DNA from: Botryllus schlosseri
Taxonomy: Eukaryota
NCBI GenBank assembly: GCA_051294905.1
Contig: CM119379.1
Span: 22,382,001-22,446,000, forward strand
Length of the DNA: 64,000 nt
Direction: 5' to 3'
Shown here: positions 27,701-64,000 of the stretch, in pieces
Numbering within the stretch: the stretch's first letter is position 1
How the letters are laid out: every line of letters begins with the position of its first letter
The notes under the pieces: model-generated
Told to the model about the DNA's origin: nothing
Databases searched by the model: none
The model's input: the letters and a program-made list of their open reading frames with translations, nothing else
Position numbers and translations under genes: made by a program

Positions 27701-30642
27701 TGGGTTGTGTTCGGACTGAGTTGACACTCGGATATCGTGTCTGGGGCGTGTTCGGTCTGTATTGTCATTCGGACATGGTGTCTTGGGCGTGTTTGGCCTG
27801 TGTTGATACTCGGACATCTTGTCTGAGGCGTGTTTGGACAACATGTCCGGGGTGTGTTCGGCCTGTGCTGCCAATCGGACATCGTGTCTGGAGCGTGTTC
27901 GGCCATTCAAACATGGTATCTGGGTTGTGTTCGGACAGAGTTGACACTCGGACATTGTGTCTGGGGCGTGCTCGGTCTGTGTTGTCATTCACACATGGTG
28001 TCTTGGGCGTGTTAGGCCAGTATTGACACTCGGACATCGTGGCTTGCGCGTGTTTGGATATTATGTCAGGGGTGTGTTCGGCCTGTGCTTCCAATCGGAC
28101 ATCGTGTCTGGGGCGTGTTTGGACATCATGTCTGGGGTGTGTTCGGCCTGTGCTGCAAATCGGACATCGTGTCTGGGGCGTGTTCGGCCATTCAAACATG
28201 GTGTCCGGGTTGTGTTCGGACTGAGTTGACACTCGGATATCGTGTCTGGGGCGTGTTCGGTCTGTATTGTCATTCGGACATGGTGTCTAGGGCGTGTTCG
28301 GCCTGTGTTGATACTCGGACATCGTGTCTGGGGCATGTTTGGACATCATGTCTGGGGTGTGTTCGGCCTGTGCTGCCAATCGGACATCGTGTCTGGGGCG
28401 TGTTTGGACATCATGTCTGGGGTGTGTTCGGCATGTGCTGCCAATCGGATATCGTGTCTGGGGCGGGTTCGGCCATTAAAACATGGTGTTTGGGTTGTGT
28501 TCGGACTGAGTTGACACTCGGATATCGTGTCTGGGGCGTGTTCGGACATCATGTCTGGGATGTGTTCGGACTGGTTACCACTGGGAAGTCGTGCCTGGTA
28601 CTGCAACTGACTTTATAGTGAATATAGCGACTATCCTTATTTCAAACATGACTATCCTCATTTCTAACATGACTATCCTCATTTGAAACATGAGACTAAC
28701 CTTATTTCAAACATGACTATCCTTATATCAAACATGACTATCCTCATTTCTAACATGACTATCCTTATTTCAAACACGACACTGACCTTATTTCAAACAT
28801 GACCAACCTTATTATCATCGTGTCTGGGGGGTGGGGGTTGGGACTGTGTTGCCAATCGCACATCGTGTCTGGGCGTGTTCCGACATCATGTCTGGTTTGT
28901 GTTCGGCATGTGCTGCCATTCAGACATTATGTCTGGGGCGTGTCGGCCTGTGTTGACACTCGGACATCGTGTCTGGCGCGTGTTTGGACATCATGTCAGG
29001 GGTGTGTTCGGCCTGTGCTGGCAATTGGACATCGTGTCTGGGGCGTGTTTGGACATCATGTCTGGGGTGTGTTCGGCATGTGCTGCCAATCGGATATCGT
29101 GTCTGGGGCGGGTTCGGCCATTTAAACATGGTGTTTGGGTTGTGTTCGGACTGAGTTGACACTCGGATATCGTGTCTGGGGCGTGTTCGGTCTGTATTGT
29201 CATTCGGACATGGTGTCTTGGGCGTGTTTGGCCTGTGTTGATACTCGGACATCTTGTCTGAGGCGTGTTTGGACAACATGTCCGGGGTGTGTTCGGCCTG
29301 TGCTGCCAATCGGACATCGTGTCTGGAGCGTGTTCGGCCATTCAAACATGGTATCTGGGTTGTGTTCGGACAGAGTTGACACTCGGACATTGTGTCTGGG
29401 GCGTGCTCGGTCTGTGTTGTCATTCACACATGGTGTCTTGGGCGTGTTAGGCCAGTATTGACACTCGGACATCGTGGCTTGCGCGTGTTTGGATATTATG
29501 TCAGGGGTGTGTTCGGCCTGTGCTTCCAATCGGACATCGTGTCTGGGGCGTGTTTGGACATCATGTCTGGGGTGTGTTCGGCCTGTGCTGCCAATCGGAC
29601 ATCGTGTCTGGGGCGTGTTCGGCCATTCAAACATGGTGTCCGGGTTGTGTTCGGACTGAGTTGACACTCGGATATCGTGTCTGGGGCGTGTTCGGTCTGT
29701 ATTGTCATTCGGACATGGTGTCTAGGGCGTGTTTGGCCTGTGTTGATACTCGGACATCGTGTCTGGGGCGTGTTTGGACATCATGTCTGGGGTGTGTTCG
29801 GCCTGTGCTGCCAATCGGACATCGTGTCTGGGGCATGTTCGGCCATTCAAACACGGTGTCTGGGTGGTTTTCGGATCTGAGTTGACACTAAGACATGGTG
29901 TCTGGGGCGTGTTCGGTCTGTGTTGCCATTCAGACATGGTGTCTTGGGCGTGTTAGGCCTGTATCGACACTCGTACATCGTGTCTGGCGCGTGTTTGAAC
30001 ATCATGTCTGGGGTGTGTTCGGCCTGTGCTGCCAATCGGACTTCGTGTCTGGGACGTATTTGGACATCATGTGTGTGGTGTGTTCGGCCTGTGCTGCCAA
30101 TCGGACATCGTGTCTGGGGCGTGTTCGGTCCGTGTTGCCATTCGGACATGGTGTCTTGGGCGTGTTCGGCCTGTGTTGATACTCGGACATCGTGTCTGGG
30201 GTGTGTTTGGACATCATATCTGGGGTGTGTTCGGCCTGTGTTGCCATTCGGACATGGTGTCTGGCAGTCTGGGGCATGTTCGGCCATTCAAGCATGGTGT
30301 CTGGGTTGTTTTCGGATCTGAGTTGACACTCGGACATGGTGTCTGGGGCGTGTTCGGTCTGTGTTGCCCTTCATACATGGTGTCTTGGGCGTGTTGGGCC
30401 TGTATTGACACTGGTACATCGTGTCTGGGGCGTGTTCGTACATCATGTCTGGGATGTGTTCGGACTGGGTTACCACTGGGAAGTCGTGCCTGGTACTGTA
30501 ACTGACTTTATAGTGAATATAGCGACTATCCTCATTTCAAACATGACTATCCTTATTTCTGACATGACTATCCTCATTTCAAACATGAGACTCTCCTCAT
30601 TTCAAACAAATCTGTCCTTATTTCAAACCAATCGAACCAACC
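24745..30642 (-). repeat. Right arm: the same modules in reverse orientation, with ~1.44-kb higher-order repeats
   Basis: Near-identical ORF translations recur at offsets of 1443 and 1435 nt (26042/27485/28920); 21-bp blocks at ~25735, ~27180, ~28625 and ~30520. Confidence 0.9.
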
Positions 30643-33300: not shown

Positions 33301-33495
33301 AAGCACCGACTGTGTAGGTGGTCGCAAGGACTTGCATGACAAGCTGTGTAGTGCGGATCTTGATTCGAGTCGGTATTACAGTTTCTGTCGTAACTAACGA
33401 CGACCTTGAGCTATGCTGCAAATCAGTAATCCGTAGACGTCTTATCTTCTCAGACACATACTGACGAGGGAGTGGAGAGGGAAGAGATTTTTGTT

Positions 33496-36400
33496 ATGAC
33501 TCAGACAGAAGTGACAAACATCACGGAAGAAAATACGACCGTGGAACAACCTGTAGCTATTGCAACTGAGCCACCAGTTACTATGGAACAGTTCCTTGAG
33601 GGTCATTACGATGACGAGCGTTTGCCCTCATCCGCTGACAAAGTGGACGAATTGCCTACCGCCGAAGACGAAACTGCAGGTGTAAACGAATTGGACGATA
33701 CATCGAAAGTAACTTCAGTTGAAGAGGACAACGATGACGCTAATTTTACTTCGGTGAAAATCTACAGATTTCTGTTTGGGTATGTCATCAACTCCGCAGT
33801 TTTGAAACAGAACAATACACCGCTCAGAAACTTACTTGCTTATTCTTGATAATGTACACACAGTTACTGGTGAACTGCGGTCAACTATTGACCATTATGT
33901 ATTGCGATTATAATCACTAACAATTCACGAAATCAAGATAATGGAGTCGACCTCTAGGGTGAGTCCGAAGAAAATTTAGATTTCATCGAGATGGGTGAAT
34001 TAAAAATAGTCGGAAGCCTTTTCACATCCGAACCTTGTTCAAGAATTCAGCTTCAAATCCAAGTTCAAATGACATTTCTGAATTCATTTTGTATTTCGTG
34101 CATCTATTATCTATGTTAAATTTGGGGATGTGCAGTAGGGCTGTTCAAAAATAACTTTTTTCTTCGGATTCCAGCCATTCACTGATTAAATTGTCAGGTT
34201 ACCCTAAGAAACTCTGCACACCAAATTTGGTTCGATTCCATCAAGTATAGGACTCCGCAGATCCAATTAAAATTTTTAATTTATTATGGAAAATTAAAAA
34301 AAAAAATTCCCAATTTTCCTGCCAACCCCATGAAATTGTTGAGCTGTCTTCAGAGACGTTGCAAAACAAATTTGAGTCAATTCCGACCAGTAGAAGCGGA
34401 GTTATGTGAGTTTTTCGTTGATAAATCGCGGATTATCCACCAATCAAGGATAATCCGAGAAATTTCAACGAAAAACTCCAATAACTACGCTTCTACTGGT
34501 TGGAATTGACTCAAATTTGTTTTGCAACGTCTTTGAAGACAGCTCAACAATTTCACGGGGTTGGCAGAAAAATTTGGAAATTTTTTTTTTTAATTTTCCA
34601 TAATAAATAAAAAAATTTAATTGGATCTGCGGAGGCCTTCACTGGTTGGAATCGAGTGAAATTTGGTGAGCAAGGTTTTCTACTGCAACCTGACGATTTA
34701 AGAGGTGACCGGCTTGAATCGGGAAAAAAAAGTTATTTTTGAACAGCCCTAATGTGCAGCCTGAAAATAGACTTCTGCCGCTCGATACCATGTCATATCT
34801 TTTTAATCTATCGCCAGTGGCTCGATGAAGGACAAGGAAACGATTTCTGCAGACGAATACGACGACGAGGTACAAGATGGCGAAGAAAAAATTTCCTCCG
34901 TCGATCCCGATCCGCCTCGTGATATATCGGAGCCTACAGAGTCGTAAGTAACTTTATCGATAGTCAGTGCTAATCTGCTAAAACGTTAACCTGACAATCT
35001 ATACGAAATCTGTTTATCCTGTAAAATTCCGATATTGTACTCAGGGAAAAAACAGAGGAGGTGTTAGAGAAGATACCGGCCGCGGAAAATGAAAACATCG
35101 AATCTGCAAATGATACCTCTCCGTCCCTAACAGGAAGATTTCTTAACATTTTCAAAAGAGGGTGTGTGAATAATATTTATAACACACTGTATCATGAAGG
35201 CTGTATCATGAAGTAATCCTTACGAGCTCCCGTCATTTCTATTCTTGCATCGAACGATTGCTATGAATCTGAGAACGAATTAAAATCCCGCGCTGTCGGC
35301 CCGTTCTATCATTTCCTACGATATTCTTGTCTTAGAACTACCGAAGGCGACCAGGAAAGAAAATTAGACGACGAGGCAATCGAAGATACTCCAGCCGATC
35401 GTCGCAAATCACTCGAAAATCGGTGAGTTTCCTACATAACGATCGACATACTATAATGTAGCTGCATATCAATTTCTACAAACCTCTATACGCATTATGG
35501 TGTGTCTATAAATAACCAATGATATATACACCATTGATATAACTGACTTAATTTACCTCGCCTTTGAAGCAGCAGTGGCGATGAAAAGCTGTTTTAAAGC
35601 AGTGGAAGTTGCTAACTTCAACGCCCATGCTAGCGATATCCCGGAGGCGGAACTATAACCATCAACGCCAACGCGACACACTTTATCCACAATATCGTGT
35701 TAGTTATTATTACAAGCAAACGCGCATGTAAATTACATGAAGTGCAACTTATTCGACAGTGAAAATATATTGCATTCAGCAAACTCATCTTTAATAACAT
35801 TCATGCAAAACGATATCCGTAGATTTGCATAAATCACTTTGTGCAATTGCACATTTACAGGGAATCGGAAATTCTAGTCGAGTACGAAACGGCACAGGAT
35901 GAAAACGACGAAAAAGAGTCAGCAGAAAACCTACCAATTCTTCTTGCTGGAAAGTTTAGGAATATATTTCAGACGAGGCAGTATGTTTTCGTCTTCTCCT
36001 TCGTTCTCTCACGTGTGCTTGATTACAGATGCACTGTAAAAAATCTGGTAGATTTACTGGGAAATCTCTCTAAATTTTACCACGAATTACCGGTCGCAGC
36101 CAATTACTGTGCGTAGCTTGTCATTTTACATTTTGATTTGTAATATTACCTTAATATAGCTGTAAAGTAAGTTACCAGAATTTCTTCGCAAAATTACTGA
36201 CAGTTACTTGTTACTGCAGTTTACCGGGCTATTGGCAAAATTGATTAGCATCAAAATCGCTGCAGCCAATGTATACGTAGAACTGAATGTTACTGATATA
36301 TCATTCTAGAGGTGATTTGACCTGATTGAACCTCGTTTGCGAGACTGGGGTCTGTCATACCGAAATTGTTGGCCCTAGTATCAATTTAAGCTTAGTAGGG

Positions 36401-39400
36401 TACAAGAAATAACTGACAATCGTAGCTAATGTGTTATACCGTAGCCATGTTATATTATAAGTAGAGCCCGACCGATTATCGGCTCGCCGATAATATCGAG
36501 TCGATATCACGCTTGGAGAGAAATATCGGTATCGGCCATTGAAGGTAAAAAAATATCGGCCATTTCGTGACGTCACAACATGGTGGCAGAGAGTCAAGAG
36601 AAGTCGATAAAAGACGTGAGAGCGGTCAATTATAAAAATAAATGGCCAAGCTGCATATAGTGCATACAGCATAGTGCATACAGGGTAGTAGGCGTGTCAA
36701 TCTGAAAAATATTATCGATAACTAACCCCCGTTATGCCCCACTGACTTCGTGGGAATCCCCCTGCAGTAATCGATCACCAAAGACAGAGAGCAGCTGGAT
36801 GGATAGTTGTCTGCAGAAGATTTCAATCAGTAAGAGAAATGAGAACTTCAATCATGCTGGACTGACCCTCGTAATGATAGAGAAAAGCGTCGCGTCGAAA
36901 CATTTCCCGGTTCGGTACCAACAGAGCTAATTATACCAGTAATGTATGAAGTCATCTGACTGAGGCCTGCGGCTGCGGCCTGCGGGGCCACCATGATAGG
37001 AAATATGCGAGCATAGAGGGCAAGAAAATCAAGCAAACGTGGAGTGAAGCCAATAATTGATACAAAAATTTTTGATTCCGTGATGACATTGGCCAATTCT
37101 GACAAAAGAGTGTAAAATATTGATCAATTGATTGTTGAAATGCTGGTCAAGGCCCATGGGGGATGGGTGGAGCAGTTGCAGACGTGGACAATTTGAGTTG
37201 TTTTGCACATTCTTCAGCTATTTGTTAATGATGTGCTGAAGGCTCCAGGTGCATTGTCAGAAGAATATCAATATCAATATTTGGCTAAACCATTGAAGGA
37301 AAGATCCCCTGCAAGGGAGCGGTGGAACCGAAATGAAGAAAGATTTCCTGCTGTGCCACTAACTATGCTACCTAGTGAAAGACTGCTCACTGTGTTTAGT
37401 ACTATACACATCATCTATGGAAGACCACAGAAGTTCACTCCTTGGAGAAAGGGCCGAGAAATTGTGCTTCGTGAACTGTAATCTGCAACTGCTGGATTGG
37501 TGCTTTTGATACATTTTGATAGTTCCTTGATCATTTATTTCATGTTCAAGCAAATCAATGGCTGTAAAGTTGTTGAAAGAAATGCTCTTGAGGTGTTAAA
37601 TATGGGCCTTGAGCTAGATTCCATATATTTTGAATATCGGCTGAATATATCGGGGTTATCGGTGGAGGTACTGGATATCGGTCTTATCGGTATCGGCTCA
37701 GAAATCCAATATCGGTCGGGCTCTAATTATAAGGCAATGGCTGTACGCCGTACGGCCAGTCTCGCTGGTTACATTCGTTGTCACGGATAAGGCTGATAAG
37801 TTAGAAAATTAGTTCAGGATGTATAATATTGCTCGGGGAAACTAGAAATATCAGCACCGAATGCTCAGCTGACCATTTGTTAATGGCGGACAAGGCGACC
37901 TGTAATAGGTTACATTAGGTGACTGCTTTTTCTGAGATTCGTAGTAAACAACCAACGCACAACTGTGACATCACAAGCAGCGTCTGGTTAGGTAAGTACA
38001 GTAAGTAGTGAACAACACATGGAATATATATCAATTTATACGAAATTAGATGAAAAAAGGGACTATGTGCAATGCTAAATGTTTCTGTATGGAAAAAACG
38101 ACCCAGATCAAACATTATAACGTGGCCAGTAAATATTATTGGTGTCATGTGTCAGCGGATGAATACCATTTATTTCGAAATCGTTCGAGTGTCGTCTGGC
38201 CAGTGGTCATTAGTGAGATTTGAGCAAAGGGTGGAGCGAAGCTTGTTGTGCTTGAAGAAAGTGGACGCGACCGTTGAAGATTCCTAGGAATGCTGAATGG
38301 AATACGCATCTTAAAAGGTAATACAGTACTACATAGTATTTGTTACCGTGAATATCTGACTCTGCACACCAGCCCTCGATGACTTAGATTTCATGATTGA
38401 AATATTTCGTTCGCCGCATTCTCTGTTCTATTTTGGGATATTTGTCGACTTATATAGTGACCACATACTCCGCTGCGGAGGAGTTGAAACTGTTGGCTTG
38501 GTAATGTCATTTTCGGGCCATAGCATAGATATGTTTTCATCCACTGCTGGATTTGTTTGCCACACAAGCCACCTTAAATTAGGAACCTTTTGCGTCAATA
38601 CAGAGATAAAGTCTGAATCTCTGCTATGTCGTGTAAAAGGCGGAGCCGTCATCACACAATGTGCCAGTACCGGTACTTCAAAACATGTTATATTTTTGTT
38701 AGCCCATTTGTCTTAGTCTTTATAATGTCATGTCCACTGTCCAGGTTAGGAACTTTGCTTTATATAGCGACTTACGCATGAATTCTTTTTAGTGGAACTG
38801 CAAGATACTACTTACACAGAAGGAATGAGAACGAGAAAAAGAAACAATTGGAAGTTTGGCCGGTGGTGGAATTAATTCACGTTTTCTTGAGACCACTCGT
38901 GTTACTGCATGTCTTCTAAAGAAGAATTAGACCTCCAGCAGCAATATTTTTCCATCGATAACCACTTCATCGTAATATCATGAATGAATATACAGTTTGT
39001 TCCAATGTCGTTTTGGGGATGTGAAGAAATTGTTGCGATATTTTTGCATCGGGTTGCTTTGCGATAGGTATGGATGTACGTGAATTTACAAGCTGGTATG
39101 TAATCGTGATTTACAGGGACAGCATGTAGGTAGGTAGGCGGTAACATGACAGTCTCGATCGCAAATGTACAGTAGAACATGTAGATTAGATATACTGGAG
39201 GTGACTGTAACATTACAGTCTGGCGTGTAAAGTGAGATTACCGGACGAGTGTAAGTTAAATTTACATTGACTAACGGTAATGTTAGATTACCACGAAATG
39301 TCTGGCTACCGTGCTTCCAAACATTTCGCGGTAAATCGAGGTTTTTATTTTTTACAGTGTGGCTCATAGAATTTATAATCTGAACTATTCGGTTTAGAGA

Positions 39401-42400
39401 TGACGAAAAAGAGGACCATTCTTTATCACAATCTACTCAAGATGTTGAAGTGGAGATCGCTGCAGCATCGCGGCAGCAAGAATTAGACGATGGGTGAGGA
39501 CAATCTATATAACATTTACACAAATTGCGAAGCATGACTCGGTAACTTCTTTCAGACACCACGAGACGGGAGATGAGGACGAGGTTGAACTTCTGGGCGC
39601 AGCAAAAACTTTTCCAGTGTACGTGGGTTCCGAGATTCGAATTTATCATGAATCATAATTTATAGAACTATAATGAGCTTCATAACGCGTTTGCAAATGT
39701 AGCGATAGCGTAGTCGATGTTTGTTGGCTAGTAGATGAAGTAAAGAACAGTAACCCATATAGCATTATTAACTAGGCAGAAAGACACAATAAATGTGTTG
39801 CAGGGATATCAGCAGCGGGCGATATGACGGGAATGAAAGCAAATCAGAAGTCGTCGATGAGATTTCGGAAACGATAGTTGTTGGTGTAGAGTCCATTCCG
39901 CAACAACTGGAAGAATACCGGACTGACAAAGATACACAAATATCGTCACCAGAAGAATACTCGGTCGCAGAAAAAATAATGATATTTGAGACACCGAGAA
40001 AGTAACTAAATATAATAATCATTAATGCATGGATTTTTCATATCCTTCATTTTCCTTCTCACCTTTTTAATCACCATAATAATTTTGTTAAGTGAGGATG
40101 ATACAGACCGAGCTTCTGTAACCGAAGAAATAGATAATGAGATAGCTGCAGCATCTTCACGGACTGAAAGAGACAATGATTATAAGTAATCTATTGCTGA
40201 CTGCATATGTCACGGCTATCGTGCTTTTACCAAATTTACTTAATAAAGAAACACCAGTGAAACCGAGGAGCCGCAGTCTGCCGGAGCAATTGAATACCTT
40301 CCGATGCTCATCGCATCTAAGTTGAGGAATGTATTCACTAGGAAGTATGCGTTACATATATACACATGAAATTAATCATCGTATATATTCAAGCTTATTA
40401 TAATATGCACAGTGCTGCTGCTGATGATGATGATGATGAAACCATGACTGCGGAAGAAATTGTGACTGACCCCGACCGCGAGATTGACACTGCATCACCC
40501 CAGGACCTTGCTGATTATAAGTATGGAATAGAATTTATACTTTTTCACGATTCCGTGTTCATAGGGCTGGGCACAATGATTCGAGTACTCGAATCTGAAT
40601 CGAATATTAACTTTAATGATTCGAGTCGAGTATAGTAGAAGATGTTTTTTTCGAGTACTGAAATTATACGCTTCTCGCCACTAAAAGTTAATTTATCAAC
40701 GAGAATTATAGTTTCACTGTTGAAGCCATGAAACCTTGATTGGCGGTATCGTAGCCTACCAAATATATATATTACAAAGATAGAATAGCGTATACTAAGG
40801 TTACTGGACGTAGCACATTCCTGAAGTCATGATTATCCCGTGACATTGTCACCAAGTGGTCGGAAAGATACCAAAGTCTCATTTATGAGATGGATAACAG
40901 ACATTATATTCTATGTATTGGCAGAAACGGTACATATTTGAACTTTGACGTATTACATTCTGTTGTGACGTCATAATGGGTGATACTCGATTACTCGACA
41001 TGACTCGAAGCATATTACGTGATTCAGAATCGAATCATTCAGGTATTCGATTTTGCCCAGCCCTATACTTGTTCATTATCTAGTATATACCGTCGTCTGC
41101 TCATATGCAGCTCTTGTAAGTTCGATATTATTCATGCTTTCGATTCTTAACGCTACGATTATGTCCGTCACTCGCACAGGCATCGTTATTCCACATGTCG
41201 TTTAGTGTAATCAAATTCAATTCAAAGGTGCGTGCATATGCTTGTTTTAAAATAAAAGTGTGAATTTCATAAATATCGTTGTTCATGCCTAAAATTGTCG
41301 AATACCTGCTAAATGTCGTATGAAAAGGTTTGATACCAGTCGAGTAATGGGCTATATAGGGGCTGGGGTGCAACGAAACCTTGTTTCAGTGATTGCTACT
41401 CATAGATGACACACAAAAATCATGGCGGCGTCTAAAAATTCTAGATATCATTGCAAAATTCGGGCACTTTCTGCGCACGGCCACGCATGTTCATTGTTCA
41501 TGGAGATAACATTCCATTCTATTGGTAAGCGTGTGCAAAATTGTCGTGATGCCTCATGCCAAACTTTTGGGCTGGCAACAATATCAGAAAGACAGATAGA
41601 TTTATTGTTTAGTTTCAGACCATAAGCGAAGAACAAAAATAACAAAGTGAAACGTATTTATAGGCTGCACCGAAGTGAGTGCATGCTCAGTCCCAAAGTC
41701 TGACCCTGCCTTGAGATAACAGAAATTCAATAATAGGTTTAGCAAGTCTTTTTCAATATGGTTTCAACTGAGATTCGGCGATCTTTACGTTATAGCGACG
41801 ACAATCAAGATTCCAATCAACCTGAAGCGACTGTGACAGAAGGAATCTCCGAGCCTAAGGTTGCCGCCGTACAAAATGAGCCAGAGGAAGTGTCGTTGAC
41901 CACAGCTGAGTATGCTGAAAACGATCTGTCAATTACACGCTCGTAATAGACAATTATTATCTGACAGTGACAGCGATAGAGTACGGGAATCTGTTTCGGA
42001 ATCACCGAAACAAAAAGTACCAGAAGTTGGTATCGCAGAAAGAATTATAGGATTCCTCCGACCCAAGCGGTGAGTTGTTTCGTTAACACGCAGTGTTTAA
42101 GTATCCTCCCAATATCTTGCTGACACACATTATAAACGAAAAATATTATTGATCCCAAATGCGATCTCTATGCAAAACATCTTATTCAGATTTGGAAAAG
42201 ATGAAAGGTTAGACGCTGAAAACGCCGGAACTACAGAATTCGGCAGCCGTTACAGTGATGAGTCACAAGAAGAAAGACTCCATGGCATGTCAGTAGAGAA
42301 GCGACTCGTGGTCATTATAATTCTAACATAACGATGAAGAAGAAAATAGCGCTTATAAATCCATATATAATATAAATATATATGTCACTGGGCGCATGAA

Positions 42401-45400
42401 TAATGACACTAAATCCGAAAAATGGCGATGACATTATCATATCCGCGTTATACGCATTATTACTTCATAGTAATTAAGTAGAAAACGTTGCCAATGGTGG
42501 TCTCATAGCGAGTGCATTATAATTTATAGTAGCTAATGCTCATCCAAACTATTTTGTTCTTAGTGAGGAAGAATCTAAAGATGCCGATACAGAACAAAAC
42601 GACTTGATAGTCAGCGAGGAAATCACGGAGACAACAGCCACGGTGGTTGAGTCTCAATATCAGGAAGAGCTTCCAGACGAGAGCGAGTATGGAATGCGCG
42701 AAACGGTCGATCCAACGGCGAAACCGTCGTCAAATTTGGCAGATAGAATCAGGGAGTTTCTACAACCAAAGAGGTGAGTGGAACGCGAGAATAAACGTAG
42801 GCCTATATCGATTCTTCGTTGCTACCGATAGGGCGTCGCGGTCAATTACTGGGCCGAGAATAAGAAAATATGCATATCACGGAGTTGTAGCACATGTAGG
42901 GCTATGTTTACAGACATAGACTTGCTGCTGCTAAATCCCTCAGCTATATAATTTTCAATCGACTATAATTCTTAATTTTCTTTCATGGAGTGGCGATGGT
43001 ACAGACGAAGAAAATGCCTTACGTCCAATCCAAAACAGAGCTAGAGCTTATTACATCCGAAATTGCTACGAATTTATTCAATAAATTTATACAGAGACCA
43101 GAGTTCCCAAGAAGAAACTGTTTCTCAAGCGACTGATGATGCGTCTTCATCCCAGTCGCAACATGAAGAGCCTGATCAATCGTAAGATTATGTTATGTCA
43201 AAATATTCTATGAGTGCTTACAAAAATAATTGATCTACTCACATCACGCCGTCCTAATATTGCCCTAGTTTCCGCCGAGCCCAATCCAAAAGTTGATCGG
43301 CTTACTACTACTTACTACTACTATAAGGAAACTTTTATGTTATCGCCGAAGGTAACTGAACTATTTTTAGACTTGCGACATCAGAAATTGGACAGGAGAC
43401 GGAATCCCTTTATCGGACAGATAACAATGACAGCTCTACAAGCGATTCGTTTGATATTGGAAGAAAGATTCGAAATTTCTTTCAACCGGGGCGGTAAGTG
43501 GTTTAGGCCTGATAGATGCAAATTATCGCTATCCAGCGTATAGTACAGTTCCAGTTGTACATTAAGGTTGCATTTAAAACAAAAATCATTCTAAAACAAA
43601 CATGTTCAAAACAAAGCCCTTGTTTAAAACATGATTTTTATGTTTTTGTTTTCACCATCACGTCAATAATGTTGAATTGTGACGCCACAGTGGATTGACA
43701 TTGACAATGTACAAAATATAGGGTGAATATGACTCATTGACGAAAAAGACTTCTGGCCCCCATAGTTAAACGGACCAAAAATATCTCTCGCCAGGACTAC
43801 TTCGTTATGCAGCATTTTTACGATCGTCGGTCATTTTCATCAGGGCACTCATTCCGTACCAATGATCTATAACTATACGTGCTATAACTGTTGAACCGAC
43901 GACGATTTCGAGGGTTCCAACCGTTCCATATCATATACGTCGACTCTATTGGATGGAAATGGTCCGTAGGCTCTAACTACGTGTTTTTTCGAATGCATTT
44001 ACACAATTCTGGCATAATTTTACAAATTTTGAAAAAAAAACTTTTTTAATTTTTTTTTTATTACAAACAAAGTGTTTTATATGAAACCGTATGTACAATC
44101 ATGTATAGGTACAGTACAGTGTACAAATGACTTCGCGAATTCAGAAGAGGATTGACAAAAGATGGTACCTGTAACCCTCACTAGCCTACAACGACACTAT
44201 AGCTGAAATAATATCGTTCATAGTTATTCTTCCGGAAATGCAATAGGGTATTTCCGTGCCGCAGCGATCTGCGTAGTCACAGCTATAGTACCGACGCCTT
44301 CATATACGTGCTCTGGTGGTGATTCCGGATTCAAAATGATCTGAACATGCCACCAAAACAGTGGATACGAAATGGATCGGCGTTACTGAGATTAAGAAAG
44401 CGGTTATACAACGACCTTGGCAAGAGCCACCTTTGATATCTTCAGCGATATTCTTAATACACACTTTACATAGGCATATGGTAACGACCAGGCAGTAATA
44501 GGACTTGACAGCGACATATAGGCTCTGCCTAACAATATATTACAATAGCGCTTTTGAAGAATTCGCTTTGACAATCAAATCAATTGGTATTCTATTCTTA
44601 AAGAACAAAAAAGGATTTATCCGTATCACTTGACCAAGAAATCAAAACGGACGCTCGTACAGCAAACCAGCCGCCCGAAAGGTATAGATTTCTCTATATA
44701 GTTGAATATCATATTCATGCGCACCATCATAGTATAGTCGTAGAGATATAGCAGAGCTATTATAATAGCTTCCAGATGTCTCAAGTAGGCCTGCCAGGAT
44801 TCTCACTATGCTTTGTTTTGAAATCTAATACGTGCGCTCGATTGACGCACACCTCTGATTTGAAACGATCTATTTCTACAATTCACACCGAATAAGTATA
44901 TTGTGTAGGGAATCCGGCCATATCGCTGACGATAACATGGAGTCAGGGGAGAACCTTCATATATTTTTGGCAGAAAAGCTCGTGGAACGGTAATAGTTCC
45001 TTCATGCAATAAGTTTGACGCATGTGATTTATTTGTAACGAAACTTCATGTGCTATCAGTCTCAGCGAGGAAGAATTGGATTCGGAAGAAAATGCAGAGC
45101 CACAGAAGCAGATTGTAAGTGAAGGACAACTGGAAGCGAAAAGAGTACAATCTACCCTTCCTGAAGACTCACGCGATGAATTGTGAGACACTTCATCAGT
45201 TATAGGTTATTGGTAAAGCACCAACAACGTCTTTGGTGAGCCTTCCAACCGTGTCTATATCTAATATGTTTGAGATTACCACTGCATGTTATCCGCATGT
45301 CCTGCATGTGATCCGAAATTACATTGCGTCTTTTATCTCCAGGGTACTAATGGAAAACAGAACCGAGGTGAATATGGACTATACAGAAGATCCAAATGAA

Positions 45401-48400
45401 CTAAGGGATGCTTCCGATAGCCTCGACGCGTTTCTGCAGGAAGACCTTAATCAACATACGAGGTGGATGATTTTCTACTCTCTCTGACAGCGTTTGATTA
45501 TTATATATAGGCGCACTCTTCACTCATTTTCCATTGGGAAAATAGATACCAATTGAAAATTATAAAAGTGTGATACAAAGGGTTTCGTTGTACGCACGCA
45601 TGTGCTATCTCAGAGATGAGCGATATTTTCAAATCCGGTTCCGGAATTGAGATTGCAATCCACCTCCTAATTCTAATCCCCAGAATACTTTCAAATCATG
45701 TCCAAATCCGCGACTATAGTGACTAAAGTAGGGTTACCATATGTCCACCTTTAGGAGGATTTGTCCTCCTTTTTCAGGAAATCGAAAATCCCCTCTATTT
45801 TGAGAATTCGCCTTCCCTTATAGCTTTGACAGCCAGATTGCTAGACAGGCACAACTAAAAAACGCCATAAACGACGCGAAACATATAATGTGATGCTCCA
45901 GCTGGACTTTCGGGAGTAGAACTTGAAAACTGACCTTTTTTAGTCAACACAAGAGGCTTTCCCGTAAAAAATTTAGAATCAGCAGTTTTCTAGTTCTAGT
46001 CCGTTGAACTAAATTTTATGCTTTGTGAAAGTGTCCTCCGTTCCGGTTCCCAAATTATGGTAACCCTAACTAAAGTATATTCAACAATCGCATGAAAATT
46101 GGAAGCTTTTGGGAGTTCTAGGTCCAACTGCTACTTCAGGAGCGTCGTAAATCAAAATCCCGCCAAGTTCTTCAAATCGAAATCCAAACCAATCCTCATA
46201 CAACTATAATGACCAGTTTGAGCCATTTTATTTTAGCTGATTTACGAGCAGGCCGATCTAGCTGAAATATATCGTCCTCGGGATTGGCGTTAACCACTGC
46301 TCTAGGCGTGTTGTATGGTAACATGAGGTGAATCACTTGATGAGCTAATAATAATGTCGCATGAAACTACTCTGCTTTCGCACTTTGTATAGATCATGAC
46401 TATATAAATTATTATTCAACTTCGCAGAGACCAACACCAAGAGAGTGATTGTACAGGGTTCGCGATTCGCAATTATGATCAAGGGTCAATTCCTTGCCAA
46501 TTTATTTAGTCGTGTCAAAAGAATTACGGATCATAAATTATAAATAAATTCATCTCGGAGGCGCTTTCAACTGTCTTCTTTGTTATTGCTTATTCAGTTA
46601 CGAACAAGGGTTTACTGAGGAGGATGGCGATGACACGAAACGGGAGGAAATCATTTCTGAAACCAAAGTGAAAGCAGTGGAGTCGCAGACGAATGACATG
46701 CCAGAAATTCAGTAAATTTGCAGGGATTTCGGTTAATTTTTTGATTGTATAATCCTGCTGTTTTCGCTTGAGCAGCAACGAAGAATCGCCTTTCGATGAC
46801 CAATCGGAGAAATCCAAGTCATCGCGTCTACCTGGAATCCTAGCCTCAGCATTCAAAGGATTCTTTCAGTCGAATAGGTTTCATTTTTATATTCAATTTA
46901 CTGCTCATTGGATTTATAGTTATTGCGCAAATTGAGCGCATATATCCGCTCTAAGCTCTGAAATGACGGTCACGCAATATCTTGGTTTCTTGTACCTGCT
47001 GGGACCGCGGCCTAATTGCGTATAATTGCGTTAGGCAAATAAATTTCAAACGTTACAGTATTCTTTTCTGATATCAAAATTGGTGACCCCGATTATACAA
47101 TTTATGTTTGACAGTGACGAAACCCCAGTAGATGAAACTGGAGAATCAGCATTATCCACTTCGGTTGATATGGAAGAGCAAGTAGAAATGGCTCACGTAT
47201 CCTCTGTGGAATCTGGTCCGCCGGCATCCTCACATGAGTAAGTGCATTGTGGGTTCTACTATTCCGCGATATATGAAAGAGTACATACTTTCAGCATGGT
47301 GGAAGATTCATCTGGCCGAGAAGCAATTGCAGACAAAATCGAAGAAAAAGAAACTGCCGAAAATCTTCCTCTGTATCTCGCAGCCAGGATGAAGAAGTTA
47401 TTGGAGCCTTCAAAGTAACTTCAAATTTAGAACAGCTGTTCATGGTCCAATTATTATTGATTTGGTTGCGGATAATGTAGAATCTGAAACGCCTATGGAA
47501 GGATTCACATATTTGTGACTTTAATATATCTATTTGCTGTCTGAGCCTGTTTCCCTGTTTATGGTAAAAGTACATTTTTGATGACGTTGTAGTGTAAAAC
47601 AGCCCATGTCCTTTGAACTTTTTTACGTGCGTAATGTTGTATATATTTCCGACTGTTGACCCTTTACATCATTGTGCTGCAGCAAAAGCAAGGAAGACAC
47701 GACCGTGGTATCAGACGAACAGGAATCATTGCAAGAAGACCTAGAAAAGGACATCTCTTATGTTGATCAACCGGAAACTTCACATCGACAATTGTATGTG
47801 TATCTGTAGTGGTATGGATATCAGACTAATGAAAAGTGATGTTCTCACACAGAGATTCAGTGAATAATAGATCCGAGAGCATATCAGGAAATGAAGCAGC
47901 ATCGGTGGATGAAGAAAAAGAAACCGCTGAAAACCTACCGATTTACCTTGCGAACAGATTAAAAGGGTTCCTGCGGCCCACACGGTTCGGACGCCGATAA
48001 ATTAATTTATTTATTCGTATCTCTGATCGCTATATCTATTCTATACCTCAGTCGGTCTAATAATATATTTCCGCGGGAAATAGTTCAATTAGGGAAGTTA
48101 TTTTGTAATACGCTTCATACGCTTCCATCGATGTGCATTGTGTATTTAGTCATTTAAGCGTTCGTTAATAATATGGATTAGTTGGAGAGTTATTTAATTT
48201 CTCCACCCAATTACCAATGCTTCCAGGTATTTATTATAAATTATACGCGCGCTTTATATCACTATATATATCATGTGTAACACTAATCGACGACATTAAT
48301 CAGAACTGTTTTTCAGTCCCGAACAAAACATGCACGACTGTCCGTTATGCGGCCAAAAGGTATCCGAGGATGCGTTCAAAGATATAGAAATGAATAGCAA

Positions 48401-48545
48401 TGACGGGAAGTTGTGGAAGGTGCGTGGAGTGAACCTGAAATGCAATCTTGTTTCGGAAATTCGTGGAGGAGTCTACAAGACTGAGATTCGCATCGCTGCT
48501 GACGGAACAAGATCGATGGCAGAATCCTATTATAAATTGGTGTAG
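33496..48545 (+). CDS. Large acidic, intrinsically disordered protein (~1080+ aa) built from symmetric exons, ending in an unknown small domain
   Basis: Exons: 33454(ATG 33496)-33779, 34818-34943, 35045-35161, 35336-35422, 35861-35980, 39398-39493, 39556-39618, 39804-40001, 40093-40185, 40249-40344, 40413-40520, 41796-41909, 41968-42069, 42190-42288, 42564-42773, 43095-43181, 44604-44681, 45066-45182, 45343-45462, 46598-46711, 46776-46877, 47115-47237, 47295-47414, 47683-47793, 47853-47984, 48317-48545. All have AG/GT boundaries, are stop-free and D/E/S/T-rich. The true N-terminus is uncertain and extra exons may have been missed. Confidence 0.8.
34136..34751. mobile_element. hAT-like palindromic MITE (TAGGGCTGTTCAAAAAT family, copy 1)
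   Basis: TIR TAGGGCTGTTCAAAAATAAC / GTTATTTTTGAACAGCCCTA; perfect 8-bp TSD ATGTGCAG; long internal inverted arms. Confidence 0.92.
36462..37725 (+). mobile_element. Internally deleted hAT transposon with transposase remnants
   Basis: 15-bp TIR TAGAGCCCGACCGAT / ATCGGTCGGGCTCTA; perfect TSD ATTATAAG; frameshifted CFA(H)ILQLFVNDVLK (~37199-37240) and DPL..WNRNEERFP...PSER.L..FS (~37303-37400). Confidence 0.88.
40562..41065. mobile_element. MITE, TAGGGCTGGGC family (copy 2)
   Basis: Perfect 11-bp TIR TAGGGCTGGGC / GCCCAGCCCTA; homologous to 8713-9181; TSD unclear. Confidence 0.82.
45729..46068. mobile_element. hAT-like MITE, TAGGGTTACCAT family (copy 3)
   Basis: Ends TAGGGTTACCAT / ATGGTAACCCTA; ACTAAAGT occurs at both junctions (offset by 1 nt on the left); shares CTTTAGGAGGATTTGTCCTCC with the 19077 copy. 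Confidence 0.85.
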
Positions 48546-51953: not shown

Positions 51954-54900
51954 CGTCAGGCCTGGAATTTTGGTTCAAGACGCCAACAAAGAGCATGGCA
52001 AGCAAATCAGGAAAGAATCAGCAGGAGGTACGAGAAAAATCTTCTCAATTTACAAAGTCAAATGTTTTCACTCGAGAGCAGATTGAGTTCATCGATTTCG
52101 GCAACAATAAACGAGCGTTTAACAGGTTGGTTTTGGTACCAATAGCTTCCACATTGTGGCTATAGACTTAACAACGCAATCCATTGCAATACTATTTACT
52201 GAATTGCGAGATTATGGAAATACTGCATTATTGATGTGCGGGCACATGTTGAAGCAGTTAAAAAGAACTTGTTTCGTTTTCTGCATATGTTAAACAAGCC
52301 AAGTTCACATATTTCCATCAACCGCTAACGCATTTCGCCAGGACTGATATAGCCCCATGATAGTAATGCAGAAAGTAAATTCTCGCAATTGAAATATCTT
52401 TCAAATGAAATGCCCTTCCGAACCTGTTTGAAACTATGAAGAGATTTGTGTTATCTCATCTCTGCAGATGTATGAAGGTGAAAACTATGCTTGCTATCCT
52501 AATATTATTAGACTTGCATAGAAGATGTAGCAGTGTTCAAGTTAGTTGTTGATGTGGACATAACATACAATCTTTGCTCCCAACCTTACAATCTCTAGGC
52601 ATACGAATATGTAGTATTCTGGTTAGGTTGCCTAATGTGTGTGTGTAATTTGCTAAGCTTTTGTAGTGAAGTCTTTATGAATTTATCCAAATGTGATTAA
52701 GCATAGTATAAATTACATGCATGCCATTTTACGGCTTCCGTCTAGAGATATGAAATCATCAAGTCAACTGCAATCTGAGTATAACAGAAAAATAAGTCGT
52801 GGTAGACCAGCACATTTTTGTTAGCTGTTGCATTGTTGTTACACCAGATCACATGCTTACTATACTACTATGCATTTATGACATGATAGGATGGGTACTC
52901 TTTTTACTCTGTAGATATCGTTTCACCACCAAGTATCCAGAACTCAGAACTTCGTATAATAACTGGGAGACTGGACAATGTAGAAGGTGAATTACAGGCA
53001 CTTCAAGACCAACCGCACGTGACTGGAAATGCATGGGCAGGAAGTGAAAATGTCAAAGGTGGGTTCCACAGCAGAAATGCTGTATGGATTCATGAAATGA
53101 TAATGAAAAGTTGAAAAATATTGGAAGTCAATTGCCATAATTTATGGGCCTACTATTAGCACATATCCCCTTCTATGCTGTAGAATAGAAATCAGTATGT
53201 TATACTGAACCATTGTAGTCTTATCTGGACTCTGTTTCAGCTGTTACATCCAGAATCACGAACTTGGAAGAAGCTATCGAATTTCTCAGCAGCGCAGTTG
53301 GTGATAGATCTCTCACACAAGAAAACTCGACGGAATACAATGATATACCAAAGCATAGGTATAATTTTATTTGATTTTTGAAAAACTGAAAGTCAATTGT
53401 TGAGCTACCATAATTATATCAAAACGATTTCATGTTATTATTTGTTCATAGCTGATAAGCGTCATATTCATATCATGGATGAAATCCTGCAACTCAAATG
53501 TTATTCCTTGGTCTTTGTCCGTAGGCAATCAGACATTTTTGCACTCCATACAAAATGTGAAGAGTCTGTAGAGAATCTTCGCAAAGAAGTGTACAGGAAT
53601 ATAAGCAAAATTTCTGGAAGCAGCCTGCGTCAAATAAAACAGGTGAGACTGGATGAATATCATTCATGGAACATTGGTATAAACAATCATAAGAGACACA
53701 ATAAATTGATTTCAATTCATAATAGTCAGAGATGCGGAAATTAGTTGTTGATGGCACAGATTCTCAAGTACACATAATCGACTGCTTGAATCACAAAACG
53801 GCAGGTATGAAAAGTACTCAAGGAGTTCTAATGAGTAGATTAAGTGAGAATCATCTTCACAATTGACACAGCATCGATAATGACATCACAAATAGGCTCA
53901 ATTTTCGAAATTATATTTTTTATTCCACATTCACGGGCTGTGTTCTACGTCGTAAAGTTCACATACGAATTTCACACGTACCAGTGGTACTAATCCCCTC
54001 GAATGCTGCATTCAATCTGATAAAATTTAAATTGCAAAGTCCTCAAAAACTGCTGAAGTAGAAGTGAAAATACCGTGGTCTAATAGCATCACTACTCGAG
54101 AATGTAGTGCAAATAACCAAAATATGCTTATGTACTTGAAGAACTTCTCGGAGGTACATAACTTCAATTCACAATTGAATAGTGTACTTGGCTACACTAA
54201 ATAAGTAGAAGTATGCCACTTCTTTACTGGCCACCTCTGGAAATAGCTGGTATTACCTTTATACATCAAAGCTGAAATTGATGAATACCAACATCCTTAG
54301 GGTCATCTAACAACAATTTGGTCATATAATTGTATCAATTTATTGTTTTTCATCTTGTTTTTCCAGCGAAAGCTACGGTAAACTATTTTGATTTTCTTAG
54401 AATCATGATATATCAAAGAGAAGCAGCCCGCTAGACAGAGAGACTTCATTACAGTATAACGGCAACGATGTTCAACGTCATATGATTGGTGCGGACCTGT
54501 ACCACGATTACCCGGCAGACGATAACTCAACCTTAACAAAGAGAGGAGTAAATGATGATGCAGGAAATCGAATCGATGGCGGCGGCGATCCGCAATCGAA
54601 TTCGGAAACGAGACAGATTTTGGACGGCATCAACTTCCGGCTTTCGAGTCACGAAACTTTCCTCTCCGATCTCCTGGAAATGTACACCAACAACTCGCTG
54701 ATTTTGACGGGCTACGAGAATCGTTTCAACACGATCGTGACGGCGTTTAACAGGGCGGACAGGAAAGACACGGAGCTCAATGGCGGCATCAGGTCGAACA
54801 GGAGAATGCTGGAGTCTTTCGCCAAGTCCTTCAGAGAACTTGTCCTCGACAGCAGGAGGCAGAGCTCGGCGATCGTTCAGTTGCGGAAAAGAATCAGGAA

Positions 54901-63712: not shown

Positions 63713-64000
63713 GTATGGACCCAAACTATTGAGGATCATAGGTGTAATAATCATATGAAATGTTCGAATATCTTTTCTGACCAAGGAATCTGTTGTTCCG
63801 GATAATTGGTGAAGTGTGGATAAGGATGAGTTTGGATTCTTTTTCAAATAGATGAAGTTTTTGTTAGAAGTGTATGCCATTCTTACGAAATTGATGTAAA
63901 AATGACATTTCTTTGATCCATTGGCTGTACCGTTGACGCTATTAACGTCCCGCTATTTCGTGCACAGGCCGGTATTCTCTCCGTCACTGCAGATCTATCT

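What the first reader, a model, noticed from the sequence alone, without database searches (positions are those of the whole stretch)
34818..47984. 24 consecutive internal exons are all phase 2-2 and multiples of three
Seen: every internal exon I could resolve (63-210 nt) begins with 1 leftover base, ends with 2, and has a length divisible by 3. Known: phase-2 introns are the least common class in animals and symmetric exons can be skipped or duplicated without a frameshift. The neighbouring genes in this window mix phases freely. Inference: the gene grew by tandem exon duplication and may give a combinatorial set of length-variable isoforms, acting as a tunable molecular ruler or spacer.
Basis: partly seen in the sequence, partly recalled or inferred. 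Interest (0 to 1): 0.7.

Follow-up and report, generated by a model that had tools for sequence, protein, structure and literature searches.

The report
Acidic repeat gene, all phase-2 introns
This is a real, expressed animal gene whose 25 small exons all sit in the same reading-frame phase because it grew by repeated copying of a two-exon unit; this is a known way of building floppy repeat proteins, though the rarest phase class, and the protein's job is unknown.

Summary
They are 63-210 nt long, every length is a multiple of 3, and every exon starts with 1 leftover base and ends with 2. Transcriptome contigs and RNA reads confirm 12 consecutive junctions between 42773 and 47853. They also confirm the 47984>48317 junction and a contig that joins 42069 directly to 42564.

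With one 5' exon (33454-33779) and the terminal exon (48317-48545), 26 introns in a row are phase 2. Chance would give about 3e-18.

The exons are related to each other: 18 exon pairs score z>4. The gene is about 12-13 copies of one module. Each module has an acidic spacer exon followed by an exon ending in a proline-bounded basic amphipathic helix (ENLPxYLAxRLKxFLxPx). DNA similarity survives only inside the motif, so the duplications are old.

The core is 948 aa, pI 4.1, net charge -160, and predicted to be disordered. A 75-residue Cys-containing tail is 97% conserved in a sister species.

Exon duplication is supported. Combinatorial isoforms and a "tunable ruler" are not: only one minor cassette exon (42190-42288) was seen. 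No homologue was found outside the close relative. This is a new member of a known kind.

The parts
33454..33779 (+). Exon 0 (326 nt, phase 0 in, phase 2 out). An acidic stretch ending in the first helix-like motif, VKIYRFLF. The true 5' end and start codon are unknown.
   Evidence: Predicted. The sister-species genomic ORF P0003 is 69% identical without gaps. No RNA check.
34818..34943 (+). Exon 1, 126 nt, phase 2-2, acidic spacer (A type).
   Evidence: Predicted.
35045..35161 (+). Exon 2, 117 nt, phase 2-2, B type, ends ...SLTGRFLNIFKR.
   Evidence: Predicted. Matches profile A2.
35336..35422 (+). Exon 3, 87 nt, phase 2-2, A type.
   Evidence: Predicted.
35861..35980 (+). Exon 4, 120 nt, phase 2-2, B type, ...KESAENLPILLAGKFRNIFQTR.
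   Evidence: Predicted. Best profile match in the genome. The motif is conserved in sister-species fragment P0001.
39398..39493 (+). Exon 5, 96 nt, phase 2-2, A type. Shares EIAAAS with exon 8.
   Evidence: Predicted. Similar to exon 8 at z=5.7. DNA repeat family D3.
39556..39618 (+). Exon 6, 63 nt, phase 2-2, degenerate B type (VELLGAAKTFP).
   Evidence: Predicted.
39804..40001 (+). Exon 7, 198 nt, phase 2-2. It looks like a fused A+B module (ISETIVVGVES ... VAEKIMIFETPR).
   Evidence: Predicted. Similar to exons 10 and 20.
40093..40185 (+). Exon 8, 93 nt, phase 2-2, A type.
   Evidence: Predicted.
40413..40520 (+). Exon 9, 108 nt, phase 2-2, A type.
   Evidence: Predicted.
41796..41891 (+). 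Exon 10, 96 nt, phase 2-2, A type. The donor is uncertain (41891 or 41894); both keep phase 2.
   Evidence: Predicted.
41950..42069 (+). Exon 11, 120 nt, phase 2-2, B type, ...VGIAERIIGFLRPK.
   Evidence: Donor at 42069 supported by RNA: a contig ends there and continues with the first 10 letters of exon 13.
42190..42288 (+). Exon 12, 99 nt, phase 2-2. Cassette exon, included in a minority of transcripts.
   Evidence: An X3 contig includes it at depth about 4. Another X3 contig joins 42069 to 42564. Depth is zero in X1. All 4 variants seen in it are non-synonymous.
42564..42773 (+). Exon 13, 210 nt, phase 2-2, fused A+B module, ...SNLADRIREFLQPK.
   Evidence: RNA contigs and junction 42773>43095.
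43095..43181 (+). Exon 14, 87 nt, phase 2-2, A type.
   Evidence: Both junctions seen in RNA.
43371..43493 (+). Exon 15, 123 nt, phase 2-2, B type, ...FDIGRKIRNFFQPG.
   Evidence: Both junctions seen in RNA.
44604..44681 (+). Exon 16, 78 nt, phase 2-2, A type.
   Evidence: Both junctions seen in RNA.
44909..44989 (+). Exon 17, 81 nt, phase 2-2, B type, ...ESGENLHIFLAEKLVE.
   Evidence: Both junctions seen in RNA.
45060..45182 (+). Exon 18, 123 nt, phase 2-2, A type.
   Evidence: Both junctions seen in RNA. The acceptor is at 45060, not 45066.
45343..45462 (+). Exon 19, 120 nt, phase 2-2, degenerate acidic B type (SDSLDAFLQEDL).
   Evidence: Both junctions seen in RNA.
46598..46711 (+). Exon 20, 114 nt, phase 2-2, A type (ISETKVKAVESQ).
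   Evidence: Both junctions seen in RNA.
46776..46877 (+). Exon 21, 102 nt, phase 2-2, B type, ...SRLPGILASAFKGFFQSN.
   Evidence: Both junctions seen in RNA, with allelic letters at the 46877 junction.
47115..47237 (+). Exon 22, 123 nt, phase 2-2, A type.
   Evidence: Both junctions seen in RNA.
47295..47414 (+). Exon 23, 120 nt, phase 2-2, B type, ...EEKETAENLPLYLAARMKKLLEPS.
   Evidence: Both junctions seen in RNA. 61% identical to exon 25.
47683..47793 (+). Exon 24, 111 nt, phase 2-2, A type.
   Evidence: Both junctions seen in RNA.
47853..47984 (+). Exon 25, 132 nt, phase 2-2, B type, ...EEKETAENLPIYLANRLKGFLRPT. The predicted helix is residues 25-39 of the exon peptide.
   Evidence: Acceptor and donor supported by RNA. 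AlphaFold2 with the paralogue alignment gives a helix at pLDDT about 80.
48317..48545 (+). Terminal exon (phase 2 in, stop TAG at 48543-48545). A conserved 75-residue tail beginning PEQNMHDCPLCGQKV...
   Evidence: An X1 contig continues from 47984 into this sequence. Sister-species ORF P0002 is 97% identical over all 71 residues up to the stop. A splice at the possible donor 48419 was not excluded.

Best explanation
This is a single-copy, expressed gene. The host is probably amphioxus, inferred from a 495-Mb genome with notes on 19 pieces. The gene encodes a long (over 1,100 aa), very acidic, intrinsically disordered protein.

The gene is an array of about 12-13 old tandem copies of a two-exon module. 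An "A" exon gives an acidic Ser/Thr-rich spacer with a weak [IV]SE..V..V[EQ]S motif. A "B" exon gives more acidic spacer and then a roughly 15-residue basic amphipathic helix bounded by prolines (ENLP-x-Y-L-A-x-R-L-K-x-F-L-x-P-x). The intron always falls two bases into the codon that follows the motif.

Both introns of the ancestral module were phase 2, so every duplicate inherited phase 2 on both sides. The uniform 2-2 pattern is therefore a frozen footprint of module duplication by unequal recombination in introns. It was also the condition that let each duplication stay in frame. It is not a design for splicing. Two long exons (7 and 13) look like modules that lost their inner intron.

Splicing is essentially constitutive, with one minor cassette exon.

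Function is inferred, not shown. The helices are the constrained parts and the spacers drift almost neutrally. The protein therefore most likely works as a multivalent array of short helix-forming binding motifs held apart by acidic spacers. The conserved C-terminal 75-residue domain would act as an anchor or effector end. The architecture resembles calpastatin, but there is no homology.
For: Thirteen consecutive exon junctions from exon 13 to the terminal exon, plus one skip junction, are seen in RNA.

Exon homology: 18 pairs with z>4, with B exons aligning on the motif and A exons aligning weakly.

Old duplications: DNA similarity is confined to 40-70 nt of the motif and no intron similarity remains.

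Disorder: 27% D+E, no Cys or Trp, pI 4.14, mean hydropathy 0.378 against a boundary of 0.474.

Helix: hydrophobic-moment peaks fall on the motifs, and AlphaFold2 predicts a helix at residues 25-39 with pLDDT about 80 next to a low-confidence spacer.

Constraint: the motif is conserved and the spacer is not in sister-species fragment P0001. Exon 0 is 69% identical, about the same as the translated intron beside it. The tail is 97% identical. Among transcript variants there are 4 synonymous to at most 1 non-synonymous in the helices, against 9 to 23 in the spacers (Fisher p=0.04).

Single locus: the motif profile hits only this gene in the 495-Mb genome.

Known kind: disordered proteins are often built from same-phase symmetric exons by internal tandem duplication and carry repeated short motifs (PMC3632108).
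Against: Exons 0-11 and the 5' end have no RNA support here. The function has no experimental or homology support. Pfam, PDB sequences, the ESM Atlas and a profile search of 1.84 billion proteins gave nothing beyond one fragment from a close relative.

The variant counts are small, and the tool listed only the best-supported differences. Seven further joints in the read table were not shown, so more alternative splicing may exist. The helix model used paralogous repeats as its alignment. The organism is inferred, not shown.
Confidence: 0.78

Rival explanations
1. One reading: the uniform symmetric phase is exploited by splicing. Exons are skipped in many combinations to give a graded series of lengths, so the protein acts as a tunable ruler or spacer.
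For: All exons can be skipped without a frameshift. One cassette exon exists, 42190-42288. Seven joints were not displayed. The strongly charged chain should be extended.
Against: A 954-nt contig and the other contigs carry exons 13-25 in unbroken order in two studies. The only skipped exon is the least acidic one, carries no motif, and shows only non-synonymous variants. The conserved element is a binding-type helix, not length.
Confidence: 0.1
2. A secreted polyprotein precursor. Acidic pro-regions alternate with amphipathic cationic peptides that are cut out at the Arg/Lys residues closing most B exons (RPKR, QPKR, FKR, RPTR). This would resemble multi-copy antimicrobial or neuropeptide precursors.
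For: Many B exons end in basic or furin-like sites (RPKR|, QPKR|, RPTR|). The modules alternate acidic and amphipathic-basic segments.
Against: No signal peptide was found, though the 5' end is unresolved. There is no basic site on the N-terminal side of the helices, so released pieces would be 70-80-residue acidic peptides. The helix segments have a net charge of only about +1 to +3. Several modules lack the basic end (exons 21, 23).
Confidence: 0.07
3. A bulk polyanion: a cation or Ca2+ buffer, or a histone or basic-protein chaperone. On this view the acidic charge is the function and the helices are incidental or serve only for self-interaction.
For: Net charge -160 over 948 residues and 51 S/T-x-x-D/E sites.
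Against: The spacers diverge almost as fast as the neighbouring intron translation, while the helices are kept. A pure charge function would not preserve ENLPxYLAxRLKxF.
Confidence: 0.05

Closest known systems
Disordered proteins built from arrays of same-phase symmetric exons by internal tandem duplication (Schad et al. 2013, PMC3632108)
   Same: There is a long run of symmetric exons of one phase class. The product is predicted to be disordered. Neighbouring exons are similar in sequence. A short linear motif is repeated in tandem.
   Different: The documented human examples are class 1-1 or 0-0. Class 2-2 is the rarest, and in that survey it was not significantly enriched. Here 26 introns in a row are phase 2.
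Calpastatin
   Same: It is fully disordered and acidic, with repeated units containing short segments that fold into amphipathic helices on binding. The gene is made of symmetric exons that match the protein modules.
   Different: There is no sequence match to any Pfam family, including calpain-inhibitor repeats. Calpastatin exons are phase 1-1. It has 4 units of about 140 residues, against about 13 units of about 75 residues here. The TIPPxY motif is absent.
Combinatorially spliced acidic mini-exon arrays (troponin T N-terminus, titin PEVK; from my own knowledge, not checked here)
   Same: Small frame-preserving exons encode acidic, unstructured sequence, and skipping is possible without a frameshift.
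   Different: Those arrays give many isoforms. Here only one minor cassette exon was seen, and the rest is joined constitutively in the RNA examined.
UBZ4-type zinc finger (RAD18/WRNIP1 type; a resemblance from memory for the tail's DCPLCGQKVSE)
   Same: It has a CPxCG knuckle followed by a short helix-like stretch.
   Different: The second ligand pair (His, Cys) is absent at the expected spacing. Pfam hits to zinc-binding families all fall below threshold.

Membership tests
Symmetric-exon tandem-duplication arrays encoding disordered proteins | Consecutive internal exons all of one symmetric phase class | tested here: met
   25 exons are 2-2. Thirteen consecutive exon junctions plus one skip join are confirmed by RNA.
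Symmetric-exon tandem-duplication arrays encoding disordered proteins | Significant sequence similarity between exons of the array | tested here: met
   18 of 325 exon pairs have z>4 against shuffles. Alignments A1 and A2.
Symmetric-exon tandem-duplication arrays encoding disordered proteins | Encoded region intrinsically disordered | tested here: met
   The charge-hydropathy plot places it on the unfolded side. The spacer has low pLDDT in the AF2 model. This is prediction only.
Calpastatin / calpain-inhibitor repeat family | Match to the calpain-inhibitor repeat profile (TIPPxY subdomain B) | tested here: not met
   No Pfam family reached even E=0.1 for ten exons of the array.
Calpastatin / calpain-inhibitor repeat family | Phase 1-1 exon structure | tested here: not met
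   The exons here are 2-2. Calpastatin exons are 1-1 (PMC3632108).
Combinatorial cassette-exon arrays | Many exons of the array skipped independently in mature RNA | tested here: inconclusive
   One cassette exon was found. Exons 13-25 are contiguous in contigs of two studies. Contigs drop rare forms, and 7 joints were not displayed.
Multi-copy secreted peptide precursors | N-terminal signal peptide | not testable with these tools
   The 5' end was not resolved. Only weak candidate first exons were found.
Multi-copy secreted peptide precursors | Processing sites on both sides of each repeated peptide | tested here: not met
   Basic sites occur only after the helix, and not in all modules.
UBZ4 zinc finger (C-terminal tail) | CCHC ligand set with C-x2-C ... 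H-x3-C spacing | tested here: not met
   Only CPLC is present, with no His or Cys at the second positions in the sequence. Pfam hits are below the cut-offs.

The most novel reading that the evidence does not exclude
This is a lineage-specific multivalent scaffold whose roughly 13 proline-capped basic helices each recruit one copy of the same partner, for example an EF-hand or other groove-bearing protein. Valency is adjusted by frame-neutral exon skipping in particular cells. It would be an independently evolved, phase-2 counterpart of calpastatin- or Sfi1-like repeat binders, with an orphan conserved Cys-containing end domain.
Probability: 0.15. Interest if true: 0.55.

Novelty: new member of a known kind. 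Interest (0 to 1): 0.38.

Why it matters
This is a clean natural example of how intron-phase symmetry lets a disordered, motif-bearing protein grow by copying exon modules. It uses the rarest phase class, and with 26 introns it runs unusually long. It shows the expected split between a constrained short motif and nearly neutral spacers within one gene. The gene may be a lineage-restricted protein of unknown role that could be followed up cheaply. It does not open a new mechanism.

Tried and rejected
- **Pfam:** scans of 20 exon or ORF peptides gave no family above threshold.
- **Profile search:** the helix-motif profile against 1.84 billion representative proteins gave one hit, an 89-aa genomic ORF from a close relative.
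- **Word-indexed protein searches:** three searches (tail, exon 0, exon 13) gave two genomic ORFs from the same Logan sample and one blank.
- **Own genome:** no second locus was found.
- **C-terminal tail:** AlphaFold2 gave pLDDT 47, which is unusable, so no fold search was run.
- **ESM Atlas and PDB sequence searches:** these gave nothing.
- **Literature:** searches for an amphioxus acidic repeat protein or for phase-2 arrays gave only the general paper on symmetric exons. The TNNT3 paper's stored text holds no phase data.
- **Neighbouring gene models:** my de novo models to test the "mixed phases" remark contained stops, and I discarded them.
- **Chance or an ORF artefact:** rejected, because the junctions are seen in RNA.
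- **Recent copy-number-variable array:** rejected, because there is no intron similarity.
- **Unexplained reads:** three RNA reads diverge at 45451 into letters absent from the window. This remains unexplained.
Full report
**What is there.** The + strand of 34818-47984 carries a chain of short open segments, each preceded by AG and followed by GT. A search for exons with one leading and two trailing bases, followed by a chain optimisation, recovered them. Spliced together, 25 exons give 2,847 nt with no stop in 948 codons. Lengths are 63-210 nt and every one is a multiple of three. I count 25 exons rather than 24.

**RNA evidence.** Sixteen runs guessed to be RNA hold 6-14% of the sampled words of 41700-47990, as expected for exons only. 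I laid two of them (contigs, two studies) and two raw RNA-seq runs on 42001-48000.
- Twelve GT..AG junctions appeared at exactly the predicted positions, from 42773>43095 to 47793>47853.
- One contig carried seven exons, from 43371 through 46874, in order.
- A contig that ends at 47984 continues with letters that match 48317 onward, so the weak donor ACG|GTTCGG is used.
- A contig ending at 42069 continues with ten letters that occur only once in the window, at 42564. Another contig of lower depth includes 42190-42288. That exon is therefore a cassette with minor inclusion: about 4 against 17 in k-mer depth in one run, and absent in the other.
- Exons 1-11 could not be checked, because only one call of at most 6 kb was allowed.

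**Ends of the gene.** Upstream, 33454-33779 is an acidic exon that enters in phase 0, leaves in phase 2, and ends in a motif-like VKIYRFLF. The true first exon was not found.

Downstream, the exon at 48317 enters in phase 2. A genomic ORF from a closely related organism (P0002) is 97% identical over all 71 residues up to the stop. Exon 0 of the same relative (P0003) is only 69% identical, about the same as the translated intron next to it. I therefore read 48317-48545 as the terminal coding exon with a strongly constrained 75-residue tail. A splice at 48419 is not excluded.

In all, 26 consecutive introns are phase 2. With the human phase-2 frequency of 21% (PMC3632108), chance gives about 3e-18. 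For the RNA-supported subset alone it gives about 3e-10.

**Repeat anatomy.** All-against-all comparison of exon peptides against shuffles gives 18 pairs with z>4, and the best is z=18 for exons 23 and 25. The exons alternate between two classes.
- **B exons** end in ENLP-x-Y-L-A-x-R-L-K-x-F-L-x-P-x, and the intron follows two bases into the next codon.
- **A exons** are acidic spacers with a weak [IV]SE..V..V[EQ]S pattern.
- **Exons 7 and 13** contain both parts, and their lengths fit a fused module. Intron loss is an inference.

About 13 helix motifs are present, some of them degenerate. DNA similarity is limited to 40-70 nt of the motif and no intron similarity remains. The duplications are therefore old. 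The motif profile finds only this locus in the 495-Mb genome.

**The protein.** The core has 16% Glu, 11% Asp and 11% Ser, no Cys or Trp, a net charge of -160 and a pI of 4.14. It lies well on the unfolded side of the charge-hydropathy boundary. Hydrophobic-moment maxima coincide with the motifs. AlphaFold2 on exon 25, with the paralogous repeats as its alignment, gives a helix at residues 25-39 (AENLPIYLANRLKGF) with pLDDT about 80 beside a low-confidence spacer.

Variants seen in transcripts split 13 synonymous to 24 non-synonymous overall. In the helix cores the split is 4 to at most 1, and in the spacers it is 9 to 23 (p=0.04; small numbers). In the relative's fragment P0001 the motif KESAENLP.YLAG.FR.IF is kept, while the spacer is unrecognisable. 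The helices and the tail are the constrained parts, and the spacers drift.

**Identity.** Nothing names the gene. There is no Pfam family. There is no PDB or Atlas relative of the tail or a B exon. The tail model is unusable. Only one hit came from 1.84 billion representatives. The absence of any more distant hit suggests a lineage-restricted, fast-evolving gene.

The genome size, the 19 annotated pieces, the high polymorphism of the reads, and a neighbouring-gene note that mentions sea squirts and amphioxus together make amphioxus likely. This is an inference.

**Explanation.** The uniform phase is best read as inheritance. An ancestral two-exon module flanked by phase-2 introns was copied repeatedly by unequal recombination within introns, and only such symmetric units can be copied in frame. 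This is the known route by which disordered, motif-carrying proteins expand (PMC3632108). In that paper calpastatin is the closest architectural analogue, but it is class 1-1 and unrelated in sequence.

The combinatorial-isoform and ruler ideas are not supported by the RNA seen, although rare isoforms cannot be excluded.

My functional reading is a multivalent array of helix-forming binding motifs spaced by polyanionic linkers, with a conserved end domain. This is an inference from constraint and anatomy only.

**Context from the scan.** Other notes on this genome describe several symmetric exon arrays, all phase 1-1. Another note on this same stretch describes the helix motif, and my analysis agrees with it.

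Noticed in passing
window 34142-34745 and 57113-57524: The intron after exon 0 holds a roughly 600-bp element whose two halves are inverted copies (86% identity). Related copies at 74-88% identity lie in another intron-like region at 57113-57524. It looks like a MITE or foldback-type repeat.
   Followed up: partly
window 54401-63802, + strand: There is a series of long open segments of up to 193 codons with coiled-coil-like sequence and no Pfam family above threshold. This is probably a separate downstream gene. I could not model it reliably.
   Followed up: partly
window 26000-30000: This block has GC of about 0.52 with strong GC skew (+0.22) and AT skew (-0.35). It lies inside the stretch that another note calls a foldback-like palindrome of minisatellites.
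   Followed up: no
window 43401-44000 and 45601-45800: Contig depth in one of the putative RNA runs (X1) is very high here (about 100-600, against about 20 on the exons), inside two introns of the gene. These are presumably transcribed dispersed repeats.
   Followed up: no
window 45451: Three RNA reads leave the exon at 45451 and continue with about 40 letters that occur nowhere in the window, even allowing 3 mismatches. They could be a divergent allele, another locus or an unassembled exon.
   Followed up: partly
window 47295-47298: Reads and a contig replace the first four bases of exon 23 (CATG) with TATT. This is an allelic Met-to-Ile change right at the acceptor, and it does not alter splicing.
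   Followed up: partly
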